In this document: in pieces, positions 575-62,146 of the stretch
Layout: every line of letters starts with the position of its first letter
Numbering within the stretch: position 1 is the stretch's first letter
NCBI RefSeq assembly: GCF_006345805.1
Contig: NC_043024.1
Location: forward strand, 12,586,001 to 12,650,000
Direction: 5' to 3'
Source: Octopus sinensis
Lineage: Eukaryota
Length of the DNA stretch: 64,000 nt
Translations under genes and position numbers: made by a program
Notes under the pieces: model-generated
Told to the model about the DNA's origin: nothing
Seen by the model: the letters and a program-made list of their open reading frames with translations, nothing else
Database searches by the model: none

Positions 575-793
575 TACTCATTTACTTGTTTCAGTCATTT
601 GACTGCGGCCATGCTGGAGCACCGCCTTTAATCGAGCAACTCGACCCCGGGACTTATTCTTTTGTAAGCCCAGTACTTATTCTATCGGTCTCTTTTGCCG
701 AACCGCTAAGTAACGGGGACACAAACACACCAGCATCGGTTGTCAAGCAATGCTAGGGGGACAAACACGGACACACAAACACACACACACACA

Positions 794-834
<41 letters not shown>

Positions 835-989
835 TATATATATACATATATACGACAGGCTTCTTTCAGTTTCCGTCTATCAAATCCACTCACAAGGCTT
901 TGGTCGGCCCGAGGCTATAGTAGAAGACACTTGCCCAAGGTGCCACGCAGTGGGACTGAACCCGGAACCATGTGGTTGGTAAGCAAGCT
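575..989 (-). mobile_element. tRNA-derived SINE family A (CORE-like CCTTGGGCAAGT segment, internal (TA)/(TG) microsatellite), head slightly truncated
   Basis: Matches the full-length copy at 54000-54403 in reverse complement. Confidence 0.9.
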
Positions 990-3093: not shown

Positions 3094-3291
3094 TGTACGT
3101 GCGCATACACACGTCACTGGATTGCAGACATGCTGGGGCACGGTATCGAGGGATTTTAGTCATGCAAATCAACCACAGAGCGTATTTTCCTCTTAAGCTT
3201 AGTATTTATTGTATCAGTCTCGTTTGCCAAACCGTTAAATTCCGAGGCCATACTGAAACCAACACTGTTTGTAGGTGGAGGAACAAACATA

Positions 3292-3349
<58 letters not shown>

Positions 3350-3350
<1 letters not shown>

Positions 3351-3518
3351 GATGTGATTCTTTCAATTTCCGTCTGCTAAATTCGGCCAAAAGCATCATT
3401 CGGTCCTGGGGCTATAGTAGAAGTCACTAGCCTAAGGCGCCACTTCCGCGCAATGGGACTGAACCCGAAACCATATGGTCGCAAAGCAAACTTCTTAACC
3501 ACACAGCCATACCAGTAT
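3350..3518 (-). mobile_element. SINE family A head, older subfamily
   Basis: GGCTATAGTAGAAG...GGGACTGAACCCG...AACCACACAGCCAT homologous to the family A head. Confidence 0.8.
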
Positions 3519-4994: not shown

Positions 4995-5808
4995 TTCTTT
5001 TATTTTTATTTGTTTCAGTCATTTGACTGCGGCCATGCTGGAGCACCGCCTTTAGTCCAACAAATCGACCCAAGGAATTTTGTAAACCTAGTATTTATTC
5101 CATCGGTCTCTTTTGCCGAACCGCCAAGTATATATAATATATAATACTTTTCTCCCTGGATTAAGTGCTCGTTTCTATTTTTGTCTTCTGCAATTTTATT
5201 TTTGGATCTTCTATATATATGAAGAATTTTCCTCCATGTGGCTGTTTTTCTCTCTGCAAAACAGAAAATTGCATTATGGAACAGTCATGTTAACGAGTTT
5301 TTTTTAATTTACTTATCATCCGTCGAGATACGTCTGCACCACTGGATACTCCTGAACCAGTTTTTGTGTGTCCCACAAGAGGAGTTGACGCTAGATGTGT
5401 CGAAACAATTGTTGTGATTAATAATATATTCTCGTATATTCCATCTTCTGTCTTTCATTTGTTTTATATATTATATATATATATATATATATAATACTTT
5501 TCTCCCTGGATTAAGTGCTCGTTTCTATTTTTGTCTTCTGCAATTTTATTTTTGGATCTTCTATATATATGAAGAATTTTCCTCCATGTGGCTGTTTTTC
5601 TCTCTGCAAAACAGAAAATTGCATTATGGAACAGTCATGTTAACGAGTTTTTTTAATTTACTTATCATCCGTCGAGATACGTCTGCACCACTGGATACTC
5701 CTGAACCAGTTTTTGTGTGTCCCACAAGAGGAGTTGACGCTAGATGTGTCGAAACAATTGTTGTGATTAATAATATATTCTCGTATATTCCATCTTCTGT
5801 CTTTCATT

Positions 5809-5854
<46 letters not shown>

Positions 5855-15683: not shown

Positions 15684-15816
15684 ATTGGTAATTAGTGTGC
15701 TATTATTATTTATGTAATAGTATTTGGTGTTAGGTATATTACAGGCTGTCTGCAAGTCTGTCTCTACTCTGTACTAAAATTCCATATTATTTTCACATTG
15801 CTTATTTTCCACGTAG

Positions 15817-15912
15817 GTGGGACTTTATACGAGAATCAACGAGATTTCTTTCTTGGCTTAATAAACAATCGGTGGTTAGGTGTACATAGAGCTTTGCTAC
15901 GTCGTTGTGATT
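15817..15912 (+). CDS. Coding exon (96 nt, phase 1-1) of an unrecognised membrane protein: xGTLYENQRDFFLGLINNRWLGVHRALLRRCD
   Basis: Acceptor TTATTTTCCACGTAG; donor T|GTAAGA; open frame; joins in frame to exon 16149 across a 236-nt intron. Confidence 0.65.
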
Positions 15913-16148
15913 GTAAGAATAAAATTTTGTTGGAGCAAGTGTAGGACATTTCGGTATAATGTGATATATTGTCTCTAGAAAGGCTTCAAACGGGCCACAT
16001 TTATCATTAACTTTGTAGTGACAGGCGTATGTCTCGTTTGTTTCTGTTTTCCATTGTGACTTCAGCTGTTCAAAGACGAAACAAATTCGTTGTGGGAATT
16101 TTGTTTCTCTATATGTGATCAACTTGCTACCCTTTTTTTCTATCGCAG

Positions 16149-16270
16149 TCAACGAGAGACCAGATCAGGCGTTTTGTGAATTAGAATGGCAATGGGCAAC
16201 ATCAATAACTGCCTTCTTATATTGTGCCCTGACACTCTGGAGCATCCTTTATTTCGTGGATCCACAGAAG
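16149..16270 (+). CDS. Coding exon (122 nt, phase 1-0): FNERPDQAFCELEWQWATSITAFLYCALTLWSILYFVDPQK, one predicted TM helix
   Basis: Acceptor CCCTTTTTTTCTATCGCAG; donor AAG|GTGAGA; open frame; 22-residue hydrophobic stretch. Confidence 0.7.
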
Positions 16271-18370: not shown

Positions 18371-18439
18371 TTCATATTGAAGAAAGAAACCTAGCTGTTT
18401 CTTGTAATACATACTAATACATACATTTAATGCAAATGT

Positions 18440-18537
18440 TTTTCAGGGGCCCTTAAAATACAATTGTAGATCCCCACTTTACTACTTCGTTGCGTGGGCC
18501 CCAAAAACCTTATATCGACCCTGGTTGAGAACCACTG
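18440..18537. mobile_element. hAT-type MITE end (TIR GGTTGAGAACCACTG, 18523-18537)
   Basis: Reverse complement CAGTGGTTCTCAACC is a typical hAT/Charlie MITE terminus. Confidence 0.6.
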
Positions 18538-18539
18538 GT

Positions 18540-18602
18540 GTAAACCCCGACCCAGATTTAGTGAAGACCATCATCGCTGATGATGAGACATGGGCTTATG
18601 GT
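18540..18602 (+). pseudogene. Mariner transposase fragment around the first catalytic Asp (NPDPDLVKTIIADDETWAYG)
   Basis: Resembles the mariner motif DPDFL..IITGDETWVY.Y. Confidence 0.6.
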
Positions 18603-18674
18603 GTCTGCTCGATGGCTTCGGTCACCTTGTGGAAAACTGGAAATCCGCCGTACACGCTGTACTCTCGGCATAAA

Positions 18675-18752
18675 AGTCGGGAACGTAACAGCAGACGAAA
18701 TACCGCTAAGCATTTCGCCCGGCTGCTAACGTTTCTGCCAGCTCGCCGCTTT
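18675..18752 (-). mobile_element. SINE family C head
   Basis: AAATACCGCTAAGCATTTCGCCCGG...TTTCTGCCAGCTCGCCGC. Confidence 0.85.
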
Positions 18753-18870
18753 TTCTGTTATTGTACCAATTCTATCAACCTATTACCATTGAAAGAACGG
18801 GTATTGTTGGTAAGGCTCTTCGACTAGAAGAAGCGTGTCAAACAGAGATTCGGTGGCAGATAGATATGTT

Positions 18871-19638: not shown

Positions 19639-19854
19639 ATTTCTTTATTACCCACAAGGGAGACAAACAAGGACAGACATAGGTATTAAGTCGATTACAT
19701 CGACCCCAGTGCGTAACTGGTACTTAATTTATCGACCCCGAAAGGATGAAAGGCAAAGTCGACATCGGCGGAATTTGAACTCACAACGTAACGCAGATGA
19801 AATACCGCTAAGCATTTCGCCCGGCCTGCTAACGTTTCTGCCAGCTCGCCGCCT
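19639..19854 (-). mobile_element. SINE family C, full length
   Basis: Reverse complement of the 58239-58471 copy. Confidence 0.9.
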
Positions 19855-25259: not shown

Positions 25260-25473
25260 CTTTTGTACTCTAGGCACAAGGCGCAAAATTTTTGGGGAAG
25301 CGTCCAGTCGATTAGATCGACCCCAGTACGCAACCCGTACTTAATTTATCGACCCCAAAAGGATGAAAGGCAGAGTCGACCTCGAAGGAATTTGAACTCA
25401 GAACGTAAAGACAAACGAAATACCGCTAAGCATTTCACCCGGGGTGCAAACGTTTCTGCCAGTTGGCCGCCTT
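25260..25473 (-). mobile_element. SINE family C (alternative tail)
   Basis: Family C head and central domain; tail TGTGCCTAGAGTACAAAA. Confidence 0.85.
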
Positions 25474-25491
25474 GATGGTTATAAAAATACT

Positions 25492-25722
25492 CATTTCTTT
25501 ATTGTCCACAGGGGGCTAAACATAGAGGAGACCAACAAGGAAAGGCAAAGGAATTAAATCGATTAAAACGACCTCAGTGAGTAACTGGTACTTATTTAAT
25601 CGATGCTCAAAGGATGAAAGGCAAAGTCGACCTCGACGGAATTTGAACTCAGAACATAAGACAGACGAAATGCCGCTAAGCATTTCGTCCGGCGTGCTAA
25701 CCATTCTACCAGCTCTCTACCT
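25492..25722 (-). mobile_element. SINE family C, tandem with the preceding copy
   Basis: Family C head, central domain and tail. Confidence 0.85.
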
Positions 25723-25774
25723 TAGTGTTGGTAGTAATAATGGTAGCATATACCTTATTGGTAGTAGTAGTAAT

Positions 25775-26152
25775 GGAGGAGTAATGGCCCAGTGGTTAGG
25801 GCAGTGTACTGATGGTCATAGGATCGCGGTTTCGATTCCCAGACCGGGCGTTGTAAGTGTTTATTGAGCGAAGACACCTAAAGCTCCACGAGACTCCGGC
25901 AAGGGGTGGTGGCGAACCCTGCTGTACACTTTCACCACAACTTTCTCTTACTCTTTCTTCCTGTTTCTGTTGTACCTGTATTTCAAAGGGCCAGCCTTGT
26001 CACACTCTGTGTCACGCTGAATCTCCCCGAGAACTACGTTAAGGGTTCACGTGTCTGTAGAGTGCTCAGCCACTTACACGTTAATTTCACGAGCAAGCTG
26101 TTCCGTCGATCGGATCAACTGGAAACACTCGTCGTTACCGACGGAGTGCCAC
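25775..26152 (+). mobile_element. SINE family B, full length (tail T1)
   Basis: Matches 33581-33957 over its length. Confidence 0.9.
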
Positions 26153-29774: not shown

Positions 29775-30250
29775 ATGTGTGTGTGAGAGAGTGTGTACGT
29801 GTGATCGTATCTGTGTGTATGCGTGTGTGTACGTGTGATCATAAGTGTGTGTGTGTGTACGTATGTTCGTATGTGTGTGTATGTGTAGTGTGTTTGTATG
29901 TGTCTGTGTGTATGTATGTTCGTATGTGCATGTGTGTGTACGTGTACGTATGTTCGTATGTGTATGTGAGTGTGTGTGTGTGTACGTGTGTTCGTATGTA
30001 TGTGTGTGTTGTGCGTGTACGTGTGATCGTATGTGTGTGTGTGTACGTATGTTCGTATGTGTGTGTGTGTGTACGTATGGTCGTATGTGTGTGTGTGTGT
30101 AGTGTGTTCGTATGTGTGTATGTATGTTCGTACGTGTACGTATGTTCGTATGTGTATGTGAGTGTGTATGTGTGTGTGTACGTGTGTGTGTGTGTGTATG
30201 TGTGTGTGTGTGTGTACGTGTGTGTGTGTATGTGTGTGTGTGTGTGTATG
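29775..30250. repeat. Cryptic (TG)n array with recurring CGTATG/GTACGT interruptions
   Basis: Direct observation. Confidence 0.95.
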
Positions 30251-30560
30251 GTCAGTCAGTATGTTTCTGTTTCGGCTTTGAAGCCTCCACGTGGTTACTA
30301 AGCAAATTTCTTAAGCACACAGCCATGGCTGAACACGTGACACATTTATTTAAAAAACAATAAACGACACAATAATGTTACGTGTCAGAGAAAGAAGAGA
30401 AAGAACAAAAAAATATTGTGTTTCAAAATATATGGCAACAGAAATTGAAACAATAATAAAAAGACAAAAAAGACAAAAAAAAACAATAACAACAAACTAA
30501 GAAAGCAATGACGTAGAGACATGACCATAAATAGAGTGAAAGTGATCTGAACAGACTTAC

Positions 30561-30660
30561 TTGTTCATAAGTGACAATACACTCTGCTATAAAAGTTGCC
30601 ACATAAAAACGTTTGAAAGCAACTCACCTGTGAAGAAAAAAGAAGAAGAAAGAGTAAAAT
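30561..30660 (-). other. Candidate recursive splice site (polypyrimidine tract-CAG|GTGAGT at 30628/30627) with a 67-nt cryptic exon ending at GTAAGT (30560)
   Basis: Minus strand: TATTAATATTTTACTCTTTCTTCTTCTTTTTTCTTCACAG|GTGAGT...GAACAA|GTAAGT. Confidence 0.45.
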
Positions 30661-30719
30661 ATTAATAGAGTCACGATTTCTTCAGCAGGAAAACAATACA
30701 CACATCTATATACGTACGT

Positions 30720-30886
30720 ACGTGTGTGTGTTTGTGTGTGTGTGTATGTGTGTGTGTGTGTTTGTGTGTGTGTGGCTGTGTGTATGTGTGTGTTTGGGTG
30801 TGTGTGTGTGTATCTGTGTGTGTATCTGTGTGTGTGTTTGTGTGTGTGTGTGTGTATCTGTGTGTGTTTGTGTGTGTGTGTGTGTA

Positions 30887-30936
<50 letters not shown>

Positions 30937-31103
30937 TGTGACTGTGAGTTTGTGTGTGTGTGTTTGTGTGTATGTGTGTGTTTGTGTGTATGTGTGTGTA
31001 TGTGTTTGTGTGTGTGTGTTTGTGTGTGTGTGTATATATGTGTGTGTGTGTGTATATATGTGTGTGTGTGTGTGTGTGTATGTGTGTGTGTGTGTATGTG
31101 TGT
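30720..31103. repeat. Long (TG)n array
   Basis: Direct observation. Confidence 0.95.
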
Positions 31104-31744: not shown

Positions 31745-32313
31745 TATTCAGTTTAGGAATTAGTTCTACATGTGTCTAAGTTTTTAGTCGGTGCCCTCAT
31801 GAGAGAAAATTCGTGTTGTGCAGATGTGTTTCCCCGCTTGCTGCCTAGCGACTGGAAATCGTATAAAAAGCGTTCCTTTTCTGAACAGAGGGTTTTCGCT
31901 TCAATGAATTTCGTTTCAGGGTATTCTTCTGCTGCACGACAACGCCCGCCCTCATATCGCCAATATGACCAAGGAAGCCATTCAAACGCATGGCTGGGAA
32001 GTGGTGCCACACCCGCCGTACTCTCCTGATTTGGCACCAATGGATTTCCACCTCTTTCGATCTCTTTCAAATGCTATGCGCGGAGTTTCGTTCAATACTG
32101 ATGCCGAATTCAGAGCTTGGTTGGATCAATTTTTCAAGTCGAAATCGGGTGATTTCAACCAACGAGGGATTGAAAATCTTGTTGAACGTTGGGAAGAAGT
32201 TGTAAACAACAAGGGTGAATACATTATTGATTAATTAATTGTTATTTTTTTCATTAAACCTTTTAAAAGATTTAAATAAAAAAAACGGCGGGAACTTAGT
32301 TACGAACCCAATA
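31745..32313 (+). mobile_element. Internally deleted mariner element; right TIR intact, left TIR degenerate
   Basis: Right end AAACGGCGGGAACTTAGTTACGAACCCAA-TA; left TA-TTCAGTTTAGGAATTAGTTC matches it at 12 of 20 positions. Confidence 0.8.
31920..32234 (+). pseudogene. Mariner (DD34D) transposase C-terminal third
   Basis: GILLLHDNARPH...GWEVVPHPPYSPDLAPMDFHLF...RWEEVVNNKGEYIID*; exactly 34 residues between the second and third Asp; stop codon upstream in frame at 31905. Confidence 0.95.
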
Positions 32314-32358
32314 TATATACATGCTTGTGTGTGTGTATGTATGTAGGCATATATGAGT

Positions 32359-33027: not shown

Positions 33028-33580
33028 ACACACACACACATTACTAAACTTGCCCCAACCCCACCCCAATATACGTATGCCAGACATGTATCTTTAGTCA
33101 ACATCTTGAAAAAGATTTCAGGAACAAACAGAAAAAAGGCTACAAACTCAACCCCACCACCTTATACAAAATATATAAAAAAATTAAAAAAACTCCCTTT
33201 CTTCGAGAGACAGACATTGTTATTATCAACACCATTATCATCGGAAAGAACGTAGAAGATCAGTAAAAATGACGTTTTAAGTTCTAATCGCGTGAGAGTC
33301 AACTTCGCCTTTTATCCGTTTTGAATCGATAAATTTAAGTACGAGTCACGTACTTGGGTCGATGATATTGGCGAACAGTCTCTCCTCAGATCTGTTGACT
33401 TACGGCCTCAATCAATATTCGAAATAAAGGGAGGTAGCAGAATCGTTAGAGTGACGAAGAAAATGCTAGAATTTCTCATAGTGTTATACATTCCATGAGT
33501 TCAAATCACACCGATGTCAACTTTGCATTTCAGGCCCAAGTACCCGTTGAATCGTACTTAGTACCAGTTGAATGGTACGT

Positions 33581-33957
33581 GGAGGCGCAATGGCCCAGTG
33601 GTTAGGGCAGCGGACTCGTGGTCGTAGGATCGCGGTTTCGATTCCCAGACTGGGCGTTGTGAGTGTTTATTGAGCGAAAGCATCTAAAGCTCCACGAGGC
33701 TCCAGCAGGGGGTGGTGGTGAACCCTGCTGTATTCTTTCACCACAACTTTCACTTTCTTCCTCTCTCTGTTGTACCTGTATTTCAAAGGGGCCAGCTTTG
33801 TCACACTCTGTGTCATGCTGAATCTCCCCCGAGAACTACGTTAAGGGTACACGTGTCTGTGGAATGCTCAGCCACTTGCGGGTTAATTTCACGAGCAAGC
33901 TGTTCCGTTGATCGGATCAACTTGAACCCTCGACGTCGTAACCGACGGAGAGCCAAC
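33581..33957 (+). mobile_element. SINE family B, full length (tail T1)
   Basis: A-box TGGCCCAGTGG, B-box GTTTCGATTCC; matches 25775-26152. Confidence 0.9.
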
Positions 33958-37470: not shown

Positions 37471-37910
37471 TTCATATCGTGCAATGTAAACACTGGTCAA
37501 GAAACCTTATGTAGACATTACATTTGATTAAGCATGACCTGAACACCAAATGAGGTTTGTCCAACTCCTTCGACGCCAAACGCTCAATGCCCTCCTTCAG
37601 CCAAACGACGCCTATTCAAACGCTTTGCCAACAAACTGTCAGGGGATCTAACAACAACAATTACTGTGGCTGTAATAAAAAATGATATTCTACGAGTTGG
37701 CAGATCAAGGAGTATAAACATTAGAAGGGGGTTGTCTATGATGGCTTTCAAGAGAAGAGTTTTGATTTTTAAACTTACGCCTTAAGACAGACAACATCTA
37801 TTTCGTATAAATGATAAAAAAAGATCCCCCAAGTCTAACTGTTTTTAACGAAAGCAAGGACGAATGTAAAAAAAAATCACCTCATAATGGCAAATTAACG
37901 CTTGTTTACT

Positions 37911-38220
37911 TGCTTAATGGTTAGGGGCATTCAGCTCATGTTTGTAAGGTCGCGAGTTCAATTCCAGGTGATGCGTTTTGTCCTTGAGCAAGACACTTTA
38001 TTTCACATTGCTCCAGTCCACTCAGCTGGCAAAAGTGAGTCGTACCTGTTTTTCAAAGGATCAGCCTTGTCACACTGTATCACGCTGAATCTCCCCGAGA
38101 ACTACGTTAAGGGTACACGTGTTTGTGGAGTGCTCAGCCATTTGCTCGTCAATTTCACAAGCAAGCTGTTCCGTTGCGTATCAGTTGGAGCCCTCGTCGT
38201 CGTAACCGACGGAGTGCTCC
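37911..38220 (+). mobile_element. Mosaic SINE: type D head/body joined to family B tail T1
   Basis: The 5' part matches 35888; from GTACCTGT onward it matches 25974-26150. Confidence 0.85.
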
Positions 38221-40015
38221 TATACTATGTCGTCTCAACAGTTACAAAACAGTTTCTTGGAAATACTAAAATATCACAGAATGGTAAAACAATGAAAGAA
38301 CTGAACTGCCATTGTGGATTTGGAAAAGGAAAAAAAAAATCTCTTTGATCGACAGAGAGCTGTCAATCATGTCGTGTTGCCTATGAAATGTAAATAGATT
38401 AATGATATACTTTGCACCAACGAAGTGTGAAAAATAGAATAGAAACAATGTTTGGAAACAGTAAAAACGAGAATAGTTGAATCATGGGTTGGTTATCGTT
38501 AAGGAAGAGCTAAAAACCGTCAGTGAAAAAATTCCGGCATCAGAAAAGGGTAACTGTATGGAAAGAATATAAAGAAATTTCATCAAAACTAATCAACAGT
38601 TTACAGAAGTATGAAGGGAAACTCAATAATTGTCATAATTTTTAGGAAGATTCTGGAGAGAGGTAAAAAAATTTAAGTTGAGAACAGAGTGGCAACACGA
38701 AATCAAAAGCAAACGTTGTCTCTGTATTAAGCCGCATCAATGTTGAGTTCTTTGAGTTCTGTGATACAAAGACTTGAGATTACAGAGTAGAAGAGAAAAC
38801 CTTGATTGCCCGACACTGGTAAAAAAAATAAATTAAAAAAAATGAGCGTTTTTCGGAGAAATCTTTCTGAACCATACCACTAAGTTCTCAGTGGAAATAT
38901 AAATATACTGGACTGTTTGGCAGAAATATTGCCGCTCGCACGGCGAAAAAACCAAAGGTAAATTGCGTGTCGGATGTTTGAGTATAATACAGACTGTTCG
39001 ATCTTGTACCTTTCAGTTCATAGTTAGGTGTGTGTGCGTGTTGCTGCATTCACAGTTTTGTCGATATAGTTCTGGGTCCTCCCAGGCAACACGTGATGAT
39101 ATTATTTCTATCACAGGGATAATAATAAAATCACAGCCGAACAAGCAGCTGAGAAGAAAGGAGTTTGGGGATGGAGAGAGTAACTTTTGATTAACAAAAC
39201 TGTAACGGTAGAGGTATAACAGGTAAACGAGGAAGTTTCTCGCAGTCTGACTGGATTATAAGAATTGCATTTAGTTGTGTTCCTTACTCCATGTTTAATC
39301 CAGCTTCGCCAAATAACCAGATACCATCATCAAGGCTGTAGAAAACTTGACGTTGGTCTGTGCCTTATTCTGAGGTAAAATGATGCGACTCTTTGATCAC
39401 CGAGAGAATACAGTTTCGCAACGATGTATTTCGAGGCGACTGGCACTTCTTCGATGCCTTTGGTACTTCCAGTAAACTTCTTATCCATTTTGTTGAGGAA
39501 ACATTGAAATGTATGCAAGAAAAGCGAAACCCTAAAACAACGCATAAGAGACGAACATATGGATGGTATGAAGAAGATCCTCGGCCTAGTTACGGCAGTA
39601 CACACACACACACACACACATACGCGAGCACACACATGTACATGCACACACTTATATACACATACATACACGCATCAGTAATCCAGCATTAATAAAGGAA
39701 GATGTTTTACTGAGCCGAAACATCTAACCACGTTGTAGGAGAGCAACGAATACTGTATACATACACACATACATACATACACACATGCTCATAAATACAT
39801 ACATACATACACACACACATATATATATATATATGCGCAAGAGTGTATGTGTTTAATATTGAATTGTATTTTATTGTGGATTTTGTTTTGGACAGGAACT
39901 GCTTTCTCTTTCATCCCCCTCCCTCTCTGTCTCACTCTCTTCGCATACACCTATCTATCAGCATGAGATATATCCAATTATCTCTCTCTCTCTCTCTATA
40001 TCTCTCTATATATAT

Positions 40016-40757: not shown

Positions 40758-40983
40758 ATATATGCATGAGTCTGTGTGTTGCGTGTGTTAGATACATAGA
40801 TAAAGAGATCTATATTAAGAAGCGCTATTTCAGATTTACTATCTTTCGATCCACTTTCATTCCACACACAAACACACACACACACACACAGACACTTGTA
40901 AACAGATATAGATTCACAAATACGCACACTCACATATATATGTGAGGTGAATGTATACATAAATGAATACATATATATATATA

Positions 40984-41210
40984 TACTCTTTTACTCTTTT
41001 TACTTGTTTCAGTCATTTGACTGTGGCCATGCTGGAGCACCACCTTTAATCGAGTAACTCGACCCCGAGACTTATTTTTTTTTGTAAGCCCAGTACTTAT
41101 TCTATCGGTCTGTTTTGCCGAACCGCTAAGTAACGGGGACATAAACACACCAGCATCGGTTGTCAAGCAATGCTAGGGGGACAAACACAGACACACAAAC
41201 ACACACACGC

Positions 41211-41241
<31 letters not shown>

Positions 41242-41324
41242 TACGACGGGCTTCTTTCAATTTCCGTCTACCAAATCCACTCACAAGGCTTTGGTCGGCC
41301 CGAGGCTATAGTAGAAGACACTTG
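40984..41324 (-). mobile_element. SINE family A with the head truncated
   Basis: Near-identical to 575-932; interrupted after AGAAGACACTTG. Confidence 0.9.
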
Positions 41325-49668: not shown

Positions 49669-49869
49669 AAGGCGGCGAGCTGGCAGAAACGTTAGCGCGT
49701 CTGTCGTAACGTTCTGAGTTCAAATTCCGCCGAGGTCGATTTTGCCTTTCATCCTTTCAGGGTCGATAAATAAAGTACCAGTTTCGAACTGGGGTCGATG
49801 TAATCGACTTGATCCCTTTGTCTATCCTTGTTTGTCCCCTCTATGTTTAGCCCCTTGTGGGCAGTAAAG

Positions 49870-49873
<4 letters not shown>
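49669..49873 (+). mobile_element. SINE family C with a short deletion in the head
   Basis: Matches 58239-58471 but lacks CCGGGCGAAATG...ATTT. Confidence 0.9.
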
Positions 49874-49917
<44 letters not shown>

Positions 49918-50838: not shown

Positions 50839-50897
<59 letters not shown>

Positions 50898-50906
50898 CAC
50901 AGTTTT

Positions 50907-51310
50907 ATTCTTTTATTTATTTCAGCCATTTGACTGCGGCCATACTGGAGCATCGCATTTAGTCGAACACATCGACCCCAGGACTTATTCTTTCTAAGAC
51001 TAGTGCTTACTCTATCAGTCAATTTGCCGAACCGCTAAGCTACGGGGACAAACACACCAACATCGGTTGTCAAGCGATGGTGAGGGGGCAAATACATACA
51101 CAGAAACACGCAGACACACACACACACAGACACACACACATACATATATATTTATGACGTGCTTCTTTCAGTTTCCGTCTACCAAATTCACTCACAGGGC
51201 TTTGGTTGGCCCGAGTCTATAGTAGAAGACACTTCCCCAAGGTGCCACGCAGTGGGACTTGAACCTGGAACCATGTGGTTAATAAGCAAGCTACTTACCA
51301 TACAGCCACA
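50907..51310 (-). mobile_element. SINE family A, near full length
   Basis: Reverse complement of 54000-54403. Confidence 0.9.
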
Positions 51311-51829
51311 TATATATATGCACACATACATATGTAAATATATGTACATATATACACACACATAAATATATATGTGCATGGATATATATATATATATATA
51401 TATATATAGTATATATATATATATATGCAATTAATATATGTATGCAAACATAGATAATTGTATATATATATTAATTCATATAAATATTTACATTTATTCA
51501 CCCGGCTATATTTACATTTATTCATCTTTCTGTATACACACGTTTATATTTTTTATCATTTGTAAACACGGAGCTGAAAGGAGACAGAAGAAAAAAGAAG
51601 ACCGCAGTCAAAGCTGTTCGTGGTTTTGGCAAAAGCTAACCGAATCTCGTTCAAGGAGATCATACACATTGCACACGAATGAAAACGGAATCTCATACAT
51701 GAATACACGTGTATAAACGACACACACACACACACACACACACACATGTTTTCACAAGTTTATGCAAGGCAGCGTGTTTATTCCGCACATCTTTAGAAAG
51801 AATACATATCTTTCTCTTGCTCTCTTTCT

Positions 51830-53999: not shown

Positions 54000-54174
54000 A
54001 TAGGCGCAGGAGTGGCTGTGTGGTAAGTAGCTTGCTAACCAACCACACTGGTTCCGGGTTCAGTCCCACTGCGTGGCATCTTGGGCAAGTGTCTTCTACT
54101 ATAGACCCGGGCCGACCAATGCCTTGTGAGTGGATTTGGTAGACGGAAACTGAAAGAAGCCTGTCGTATATATG

Positions 54175-54205
<31 letters not shown>

Positions 54206-54403
54206 ATGTCTGTGTTTGTCTCCCTAGCATTGCTTGACAACCGATGCTGGTGTGTTTACCTCCCCGTCACTTAGCGGTTCGGCAAAAGTGACCGATAGAA
54301 TAAGTACTGGGCTTACAAAGAATAAGTCCCGGGGTCGATTTGTCGACTAAAGGCGGTGCTCCAGCATGGCCGCAGTCAAATGACTGAAACAAGTAAAAGA
54401 AAA
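54000..54403 (+). mobile_element. SINE family A, full-length reference copy
   Basis: A-box TGGCTGTGTGG (54013-54023), B-box GGTTCAGTCCC (54057-54067), CORE-like CTTGGGCAAGTGTC, internal microsatellite, tail GACTGAAACAAGTAAAAG. Confidence 0.95.
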
Positions 54404-54653
54404 ATATATATATATGTATATATTCTTTTATTCGTTTCAGCCATACACCTGGGCCATGCTGGAGCACCATCATGGTTTTGCTGACTTTCTCAGTCTGTGG
54501 TGTTTCACATCACCACTCCTGAATGTGCCTTTGTCGCAGCTGTTGGTCCATTTGGCTGATAAGGAAGTTTGATTCCGTTGCCCTCGTCTGTACCTCTTGA
54601 CGTAGTAGATAGGCCAGTGTGTGTTAGTGGAAAGAAGGGAGAGAAAGAAAGAG

Positions 54654-58238: not shown

Positions 58239-58546
58239 AAGGCGGCGAGCTGGCAGAAACGTTAGCAGGCCGGGCGAAATGCGTAACCGTATTTCGTCTG
58301 CCGTTACGTTCTGAGTTCGAATTCCACCGAGGTCGACTTTGCTTTTCATCCTTTCGGGGTCGATAAATCAAGTACCAGTTACGCACTGGGGTCGATATAA
58401 TCGACTTAATCCATTTGTCTGTCCTTGTTCGTCCCCTCTGTGTTTAGCCCCTTGAGGATAGTAAAGAAATAGGTATTTCACCTGTCGCTACGTTCTGAGT
58501 TCAAGTTCGGCCGAAGTCAACTTTGCTTTTCATCCTTTCGGGGTCC
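58239..58546 (+). mobile_element. SINE family C full length (58239-58471) plus a partial tandem second copy (58472-58546)
   Basis: tRNA-like head, central TTTCATCCTTTCGGGGTCGATAAA domain (resembles conserved metazoan SINE central domains; family not verified), tail GTAAAGAAATA. Confidence 0.95.
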
Positions 58547-61657: not shown

Positions 61658-61684
61658 GTGTGTGTGTGTGTGTGTGTATGTATA

Positions 61685-61905
61685 TTCTTTTATTCTTTTA
61701 TTTGTTTCAGCCATTTGACTGCGCCCATGCTGGAGCGCCGCTATTAGCCGAACAAATCGACCCCAGAACTTATTCTTTGTAAGCCTAGTACTTATTCTAT
61801 CGGTCTCTTTATCCGAACCGCTAAGTTACGAGCACGTAGACACACAAATGTCTGTTGTCAAGCGATGGTGGGAAGAGAAGAACAGACACACAAACATATA
61901 TATAT

Positions 61906-61943
<38 letters not shown>

Positions 61944-62146
61944 AGACGGGCTTCTTTCACTTTCCGTCTACTAAATCCACTCGCAAGGTTTTGATTGGCC
62001 GGTGGCTATAGCAGAAGGCACTTACCCAAGGTGCGAAGCAATGGGACTGAACCCAGGACCATGGATGCAAGCTACTTACGTGGATGTAAATAGCTTGCAT
62101 CCATGTGGTTGGGATGCAAGCTACTCACCATACAGCCACTCCTGTC
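61685..62146 (-). mobile_element. SINE family A, full length, with a palindromic insertion in the head
   Basis: Family A match; extra fold-back segment at 62060-62105. Confidence 0.9.

What the first reader, a model, noticed from the sequence alone, without database searches (positions are those of the whole stretch)
30555..30665. Candidate recursive splice site with a poison RS-exon on the minus strand
Seen: branch-like TATTAAT, a ~25-nt polypyrimidine tract, an AG-free zone of ~50 nt, then CAG immediately followed by GTGAGT. A second consensus donor AA|GTAAGT lies 67 nt downstream, and that exon has stops in all three frames. The site survives as a unique island between two long (TG)n arrays. 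Established: AG|GURAGU ratchet points subdivide long introns in Drosophila, and vertebrate RS sites are followed by short cryptic exons, often with premature stops. Inference: recursive splicing in a long cephalopod intron, which I am not aware of being described. The host gene is not identified, and chance occurrence in 64 kb cannot be excluded.
Basis: partly seen in the sequence, partly recalled or inferred. Interest (0 to 1): 0.7.

Follow-up and report, generated by a model that had tools for sequence, protein, structure and literature searches.

The report
Unverified recursive-splice-like motif in octopus
A textbook acceptor-then-donor splice motif is present on the minus strand of this repeat-rich octopus DNA, but nothing I could reach shows that it lies in a gene, is conserved or is used, so it is most likely a chance match in T-rich simple sequence.

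Summary
On the minus strand there is TATTAAT (30667-30661), a 23-nt pure pyrimidine run (30654-32), a 50-nt AG-free zone, CAG (30630-28) abutting GTGAGT (30627-22), then CAA|GTAAGT (donor 30560-55). That defines a 67-nt segment with stops in all three frames.

It is the only such site on either strand of the window. I expect about 0.004-0.06 per window by chance, and about 0.07 times that with a second consensus donor.

The cephalopod origin is confirmed. The window's SINEs match only Octopus proteins and recur in an O. vulgaris chromosome locus.

Nothing supports function:
- No exon or Pfam domain was found on the minus strand.
- No host gene was identified.
- No orthologous DNA could be reached, so conservation is untested.
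- No RNA data were available.

The surroundings are (TG)n arrays, a SINE 3' fragment and a mariner remnant. The island's minus strand is 50% T, and the pyrimidine tract is itself a decayed (GAAGAAA)n repeat. A ~2.8 Gb genome should hold hundreds of such sites by chance. Stops in all frames occur in 23% of random 67-mers.

Best reading: a chance cryptic splice-like motif (about 0.6). A true recursive site is about 0.1.

The parts
30661..30667 (-). Branch-point-like TATTAAT, with candidate A 33-35 nt upstream of the AG. A second candidate, TTTTACT, lies at 30659-30653.
   Evidence: Read directly. Such yUnAy matches are very common in AT-rich DNA, so this carries little weight.
30632..30654 (-). 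Uninterrupted 23-nt polypyrimidine tract. On the + strand it is a decayed purine-rich simple repeat, (GAAGAAAAAA)x2.2 / (GAAGAAA)x3.3.
   Evidence: pyrimidine fraction 1.00. TRF rows 30632-30653.
30628..30630 (-). CAG acceptor-like trinucleotide ending a 50-nt AG-free zone (30679-30630).
30622..30627 (-). GTGAGT, a consensus donor immediately after the AG (the putative ratchet-point donor).
   Evidence: rough PWM score 8.9 bits, close to the maximum.
30561..30627 (-). 67-nt putative RS-exon or cryptic exon. Its length is not a multiple of 3 and it has stops in all three frames.
   Evidence: translations. 23% of random 67-mers from the window also have stops in all frames.
30555..30560 (-). Second consensus donor GTAAGT, in the context CAA|GTAAGT.
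   Evidence: The chance of a GTRAGT within 20-150 nt is 0.07.
30270..30340 (+). 3'-terminal fragment of the ~400-bp octopus SINE family, at the left edge of the 'island'.
   Evidence: (match to 3476-3510) and the alignment with seven other copies.
29776..30250 (.). Imperfect (TG)n array with a 28-nt higher-order period, flanking the island on the left.
30722..31103 (.). (GT)n array of 191 copies, flanking the island on the right.
31760..32316 (+). Context: 5'-truncated mariner (Mos1-like) transposon remnant. The transposase C-terminus is at 31908-32231 and the right terminal inverted repeat at about 32283-32313.
   Evidence: DDE_3; E 1.5e-52.

Best explanation
This is a chance, non-functional (at most cryptic) splice-site-like motif in non-coding, repeat-derived octopus DNA.

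The roughly 380-bp spacer between two (TG)n arrays is strongly T- and pyrimidine-rich on its minus strand. On the plus strand it consists of decayed purine-rich and A-rich mini-repeats. Such tracts followed by YAG are common in this genome. In this instance the AG happens to be followed by GTGAGT, and another GTAAGT lies 67 nt further on.

If the minus strand is transcribed at all, the segment would behave as a pseudoexon or decoy that the spliceosome may occasionally sample. It would not be a selected ratchet point.

Shown: the anatomy, the low-complexity origin of the tract, the repeat context, and the absence of a recognisable minus-strand exon. Inferred: the lack of function.
For: - The island's minus strand is 50% T and 65% pyrimidine.
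- The pyrimidine tract coincides with a weak tandem repeat. Two more purine-rich mini-repeats lie inside the island.
- The window holds about 100 tracts per strand with >=85% pyrimidine over 22 nt, and 14 strong acceptor-like sites.
- The neighbours are (TG)n arrays, a SINE 3' fragment and a mariner remnant.
- No Pfam domain was found in any non-repetitive minus-strand ORF of at least 48 aa across 64 kb. ORF inspection showed no obvious exon.
- No second RS-like site exists on the minus strand in 64 kb.
- The O. vulgaris median intron is 2.5 kb and gene density is 8.4 per Mb (PMC10700109). Most 64-kb exon-free stretches are therefore intergenic or on the wrong strand.
- Scaling the per-window expectation to about 2.8 Gb gives hundreds of chance sites.
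- Stops in all frames are uninformative, occurring in 23% of random 67-mers.
Against: - Within this window the composite is rare. About 0.01 is expected, and about 0.0008 with the second donor.
- All parts sit at the spacings expected of a functional acceptor and RS-exon: branch-like sites 27-35 nt upstream, a 50-nt AG-free zone and a 67-nt exon.
- Both donors are perfect on the intronic side.
- The absence of Pfam hits does not exclude short or domain-less exons, non-coding exons, or a giant intron spanning the whole window.
Confidence: 0.6

Rival explanations
1. This is a genuine recursive splice site (ratchet point) with a cryptic, out-of-frame RS-exon inside a very long minus-strand intron. 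The 67-nt exon is first defined through the acceptor at 30628 and the donor at 30560. It is then spliced to the upstream exon. The regenerated xxx|GTGAGT donor is then used to remove the exon together with the rest of the intron.
For: - The anatomy matches published RS sites: juxtaposed acceptor|donor and a short cryptic exon of about 50 nt with a downstream donor and poorly coding content (PMC8605326; PMC6110457; PMC6224609 abstract).
- It is the only such site in 128 kb of both strands, against about 0.01 expected.
- No exon is recognisable in 64 kb, which is compatible with a giant intron.
Against: - No host gene, no transcription evidence and no conservation data are available.
- The RS-exon donor CAA|GTAAGT is as strong as the ratchet donor. 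Exon skipping needs the ratchet donor to win.
- No further RS-like site exists on this strand in 64 kb.
- The genome-wide chance expectation is in the hundreds.
- Recursive splicing is not documented in any mollusc in the searched literature.
Confidence: 0.12
2. This is an ordinary 67-nt exon used through its acceptor (30628) and its downstream donor (30560). It could be a cassette or poison exon, or a non-coding or UTR exon of an mRNA or lncRNA. The GTGAGT at its 5' end would be incidental.
For: - It has a strong acceptor and a near-perfect donor at a typical exon length.
- The O. vulgaris annotation includes 1,849 lncRNA transcripts and long UTRs (PMC10700109), so non-coding exons in repeat-rich DNA are plausible.
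Against: - There is no transcript evidence.
- Six-frame ORFs of the island have no relative among 5.8 billion proteins.
- Stops in all frames exclude a coding cassette exon.
- The sequence is low-complexity and flanked by microsatellites.
Confidence: 0.13
3. The island belongs to an interspersed repeat family that has no other copy in this window, for example an antisense retroposon tail or 3' end. The splice-like signals would be carried by that family's consensus, as with antisense-Alu exonisation in primates.
For: - The island begins with a SINE 3' fragment and continues with A- and purine-rich sequence on the plus strand.
- O. vulgaris is reported as 68.7% repetitive.
- Antisense A-rich retroposon tails are a known source of pyrimidine tracts (general knowledge of Alu exonisation).
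Against: - 30341-30721 has no other copy in the window or in 20 kb of O. vulgaris DNA.
- The pyrimidine tract lies about 290 nt beyond the SINE end, so it is not the SINE's immediate tail.
- Other copies of that SINE end in (AT)n-type tails.
Confidence: 0.1

Closest known systems
Drosophila intronic ratchet points with cryptic RS-exons (Ubx, kuz, Bx; Duff 2015, Joseph 2018, Joseph & Lai 2021, PMC8605326)
   Same: It has a pyrimidine tract, then YAG|GTRAGT, then a short out-of-frame cryptic exon ended by a second donor. The content looks non-coding.
   Different: Drosophila sites are defined by ultraconservation, by residence in introns of tens of kb, and by saw-tooth or junction reads. None of these could be shown here. 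In addition, the second donor here is as strong as the first, which in flies favours exon inclusion.
Vertebrate RS-exons (Sibley 2015; Blazquez 2018, PMC6224609)
   Same: The RS site is followed by an exon with its own 5' splice site and premature stops. These are proposed for long, brain-expressed genes, and octopus has a large nervous system and a large genome.
   Different: Vertebrate cases were found from RNA intermediates, and only a handful of fully suppressed intronic sites are considered definite. The great majority of motif matches in vertebrate introns are unused.
Pseudoexons and cryptic exons in long introns, including those created by antisense retroposon tails (DMD pseudoexons, PMC7175933; Alu exonisation)
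   Same: It has good-looking acceptor and donor pairs in repeat-derived, low-complexity intronic or intergenic DNA, with no coding capacity.
   Different: The exact abutment of AG with a consensus donor is not a usual feature of pseudoexons. No retroposon family could be assigned to 30341-30721.

Membership tests
Recursive splice site (ratchet point) with RS-exon | Juxtaposed 3' splice site and 5' splice site: pyrimidine tract, then YAG|GTRAGT | tested here: met
   a 23-nt pyrimidine run, a 50-nt AG-free zone and CAG|GTGAGT.
Recursive splice site (ratchet point) with RS-exon | Short cryptic exon (about 50 nt, variable) closed by a downstream donor | tested here: met
   67 nt to CAA|GTAAGT. A chance second donor has probability about 0.07.
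Recursive splice site (ratchet point) with RS-exon | Lies in a long intron of a transcribed gene, in sense orientation | tested here: inconclusive
   No minus-strand exon was recognised and minus-strand ORFs gave no Pfam domain. Exact look-ups of five window ORFs found no record. No tool maps DNA to an annotated octopus genome.
Recursive splice site (ratchet point) with RS-exon | Strong conservation of the AG|GT core relative to its flanks | not testable with these tools
   The island's ORFs have no relative in the protein collection. The exact-pattern scan of metagenome contigs gave 0 matches. No octopod genome is searchable by DNA.
Recursive splice site (ratchet point) with RS-exon | Splicing intermediates: junction reads into the site, saw-tooth coverage, recursive lariats | not testable with these tools
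   No RNA data are available.
Recursive splice site (ratchet point) with RS-exon | The regenerated ratchet donor outcompetes the RS-exon donor, so the exon is skipped | tested here: inconclusive
   The intronic halves score equally: GTGAGT 8.87 and GTAAGT 8.94 bits in a rough PWM. The exonic half of the ratchet donor depends on an unknown upstream exon.
Poison (NMD-triggering) cassette exon | Included in some mRNAs of a coding gene, where it introduces a premature stop or frameshift | not testable with these tools
   The 67-nt length and stops in all frames are compatible, but 23% of random 67-mers show the same. No host gene or transcripts are known.
Retroposon-tail-derived cryptic acceptor (Alu-exonisation-like) | The pyrimidine tract is the reverse complement of the A- or purine-rich tail of an identifiable retroposon | tested here: inconclusive
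   A SINE 3' fragment lies at 30270-30340(+) and purine-rich mini-repeats lie downstream. However, the tract is about 290 nt from the SINE end, and other copies carry (AT)n tails.

The most novel reading that the evidence does not exclude
The site is a functional recursive splice site with a cryptic RS-exon in a giant octopus intron. That would be the first recursive splicing documented in a mollusc or lophotrochozoan. It would suggest that stepwise intron removal is an ancestral bilaterian solution to very long introns, reused in the expanded, neuron-rich cephalopod genome.
Probability: 0.1. Interest if true: 0.6.

Novelty: not a real feature. Interest (0 to 1): 0.22.

Why it matters
If real, it would extend recursive splicing beyond arthropods and vertebrates, to a clade with very large, repeat-laden genes and an elaborate nervous system. 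It would also give a concrete site for minigene and RNA-seq tests.

As it stands it is a lesson in base rates. In a ~2.8 Gb genome full of pyrimidine-rich simple sequence, hundreds of perfect-looking AG|GTRAGT sites are expected without any function. A motif alone, with no host gene, no conservation and no RNA evidence, should not be called a ratchet point.

Tried and rejected
1. Exact look-up of five window ORFs, including the 59-aa ORF inside the island, to find the source contig and its annotation. None is on record.
2. A concatenated six-frame translation of the island searched against 5.8 billion proteins, hoping to reach orthologous contigs. No hit at E<=1.
3. An exact scan of JGI metagenome contigs for the 23-nt core. 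0 hits.
4. Rfam and tRNA scans of the window. Nothing found.
5. A Pfam scan of about 8,500 aa of non-repetitive minus-strand ORFs to find host-gene exons. 0 families. The plus-strand ORFs were not scanned in bulk.
6. An inverted-repeat search for the left mariner end. It was swamped by microsatellites.
7. A scan for further RS-like sites on the same strand, which would be expected in a multi-ratchet giant intron. None found.
8. Orientation bias of SINE copies as a proxy for transcription direction. The counts are roughly balanced, so this is not informative.
9. Rejected: the idea that 'survival as a unique island' implies selection. Similar non-repeat spacers between microsatellites occur throughout the window, and part of this island is a SINE fragment.
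10. Rejected: stops in three frames as evidence for a poison exon (23% background).

Full report
**1. The observation**

Reading 30200-31000 on the minus strand shows the following order:
- (CA)n;
- unique sequence containing TATTAAT (30667-30661) and TTTTACT (30659-30653);
- an uninterrupted 23-nt pyrimidine run (30654-30632);
- CAG (30630-30628) directly followed by GTGAGT (30627-30622);
- 67 nt later, CAA|GTAAGT (donor 30560-30555).

The nearest upstream AG is at 30681-30680, so the AG-free zone is 50 nt. The 67-nt segment has stops in all three frames. Only the position of TATTAAT is slightly off, lying partly outside the stated end coordinate.

**2. Is it more than chance?**

The window holds five AGGTRAGT sites on both strands. 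Only this one has a pyrimidine tract. With relaxed thresholds (>=68% pyrimidine, AG-free zone >=15 nt, donor PWM >=5 bits), only one other AGGT site passes on either strand. That is 15816(+), with a weak GTGGGA donor, so this is the only site with a consensus donor.

Depending on stringency, the window has 3-76 acceptor-like sites. GTRAGT follows an AG 5 times in 6,549. The expected number per window is therefore 0.002-0.06, and about 0.01 at >=85% pyrimidine and >=30 nt AG-free zone. The chance of a second GTRAGT within 20-150 nt is 0.07.

So the composite is rare in 64 kb. Three cautions apply:
- The thresholds were chosen after seeing the site.
- From O. vulgaris gene number and density (23,423 genes at 8.36 per Mb, PMC10700109), the genome is about 2.8 Gb, or roughly 44,000 such windows. 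About 100-450 chance sites are expected, some 10-30 with a second donor.
- Stops in all three frames occur in 23% of random 67-mers from this window, so that part of the argument carries no weight.

**3. What surrounds it**

The window is a mosaic of microsatellites and interspersed repeats. The island 30251-30721 lies between an imperfect (TG)n array (29776-30250) and a (GT)191 array (30722-31103).

Its left 70 bp (30270-30340, + strand) align to the 3' end of a ~400-bp SINE family. That family has at least seven other copies in the window. The remaining ~380 bp has no other copy in the window.

On the minus strand the island is 50% T and 65% pyrimidine. TRF finds three purine-rich mini-repeats on the plus strand. 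One of them, (GAAGAAAAAA)x2.2 at 30632-30653, is exactly the polypyrimidine tract.

About 1 kb to the right lies a 5'-truncated mariner remnant:
- The transposase C-terminus is at 31908-32231.
- It matches Pfam DDE_3 at 25.7 bits, below the curated cutoff of 28.6.
- Mos1-like relatives reach E 1.5e-52.
- Its DNA is 92% identical to a TARA ocean metagenome scaffold, including the terminal repeat.

**4. Organism**

ORFs read through the window's two SINE families match proteins named only from Octopus vulgaris and O. bimaculoides. A 20-kb O. vulgaris chromosome locus fetched through one of them carries many copies of the same SINE, at up to 88% identity.

**5. Host gene**

I found none.
- Six-frame ORF listings show only microsatellite- and transposon-derived reading frames.
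- About 8,500 aa of non-repetitive minus-strand ORFs of at least 48 aa give no Pfam hit at E<=0.01.
- Exact look-ups of five window ORFs find no record.
- No tool here maps DNA to an annotated octopus genome.

With a median O. vulgaris intron of 2.5 kb, a median gene length of 20 kb and 8.4 genes per Mb, a random exon-free 64-kb stretch is more likely to be intergenic or on the other strand than inside a minus-strand intron. A giant intron is not excluded.

**6. Conservation and expression**

Neither could be tested. A concatenated six-frame translation of the island has no relative at E<=1 among 5.8 billion proteins. An exact scan for the 23-nt core in metagenome contigs found nothing. There are no RNA data.

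**7. Comparison with known recursive splicing**

Published descriptions define a ratchet point by these features (PMC8605326; PMC6110457; PMC6224609 abstract):
- a tandem acceptor|donor;
- ultraconservation of that core;
- location in long introns;
- a short cryptic RS-exon of about 50 nt, poorly conserved and usually out of frame;
- exon skipping that depends on the ratchet donor outcompeting the RS-exon donor.

Detection itself rests on junction reads, saw-tooth coverage and lariats.

The site here meets the two sequence criteria. The other criteria are untested or inconclusive. The two donors are equal on the intronic side (8.87 vs 8.94 bits in a rough PWM), so skipping is not predicted with any confidence. 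No second RS-like site lies on the same strand within 64 kb.

No paper in the searchable library combines recursive splicing with octopus. The one paper that mentions cephalopods uses each term only once and is not about recursive splicing in cephalopods. A real site would therefore be a first for molluscs.

**8. Verdict**

| Reading | Confidence |
|---|---|
| Chance, at most cryptic, splice-like motif from pyrimidine-rich decayed simple sequence in repeat-derived non-coding DNA | ~0.6 |
| Genuine recursive site | ~0.12 |
| Ordinary non-coding or poison exon using the same signals | ~0.13 |
| Unrecognised repeat family carrying the signals | ~0.1 |

The hypothesis is cheap to test outside this toolset. 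Map the window to an annotated Octopus assembly, inspect total RNA-seq and Iso-Seq, and compare the core across octopods. Until then the finding is a correct observation with an unsupported interpretation.

Noticed in passing
window 31760-32316 (+): A 5'-truncated mariner (Mos1-like) transposon remnant with an intact 108-aa C-terminal transposase ORF (31908-32231) and a right terminal repeat. Its DNA is 92% identical to a TARA ocean metagenome scaffold (L001 2273-2662), where the element appears internally deleted, spanning about 2080-2662.
   Followed up: partly
window 575-989, 3155-3513, 40959-41324, 50887-51373, 54029-54431(-), 61677-62079 and others: A ~400-bp SINE family ending in ...CCACACAGCCAC followed by (AT)n-type tails. 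It has at least 10 full or partial copies in 64 kb and many copies in an O. vulgaris chromosome locus (L003). ORFs read through it are annotated as 'hypothetical predicted protein' in O. vulgaris, so they are probably annotation artefacts.
   Followed up: partly
window 19687-19854, 25306-25472, 25559-25715, 49698-49874, 58239-58478(-) and others: A second, ~170-bp interspersed repeat family with at least 12 copies. It reads as '...RQSRPRRNLNSERK...' in one frame.
   Followed up: no
window 5129-5493 and 5478-5843: Two 99.2%-identical direct repeats of about 365 bp, offset by about 350 bp. This looks like a very recent tandem duplication.
   Followed up: no
window 15805-16164 (-): An ORF with a weak match to zf-RVT, the zinc-binding tail of non-LTR reverse transcriptases (E 0.07). 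It is probably a decayed LINE 3' end.
   Followed up: no
window 25774-26151, 33580-33955, 38039-38217: Another repeat family at 85-88% identity. It is unclassified and had no Pfam hit in the one copy tested (37899-38345).
   Followed up: no
window 18408-18824 (+): An ORF containing '...IIADDETWAYG...', reminiscent of the mariner 'ITGDETW' motif, fused to SINE-like sequence. It has no Pfam hit.
   Followed up: no
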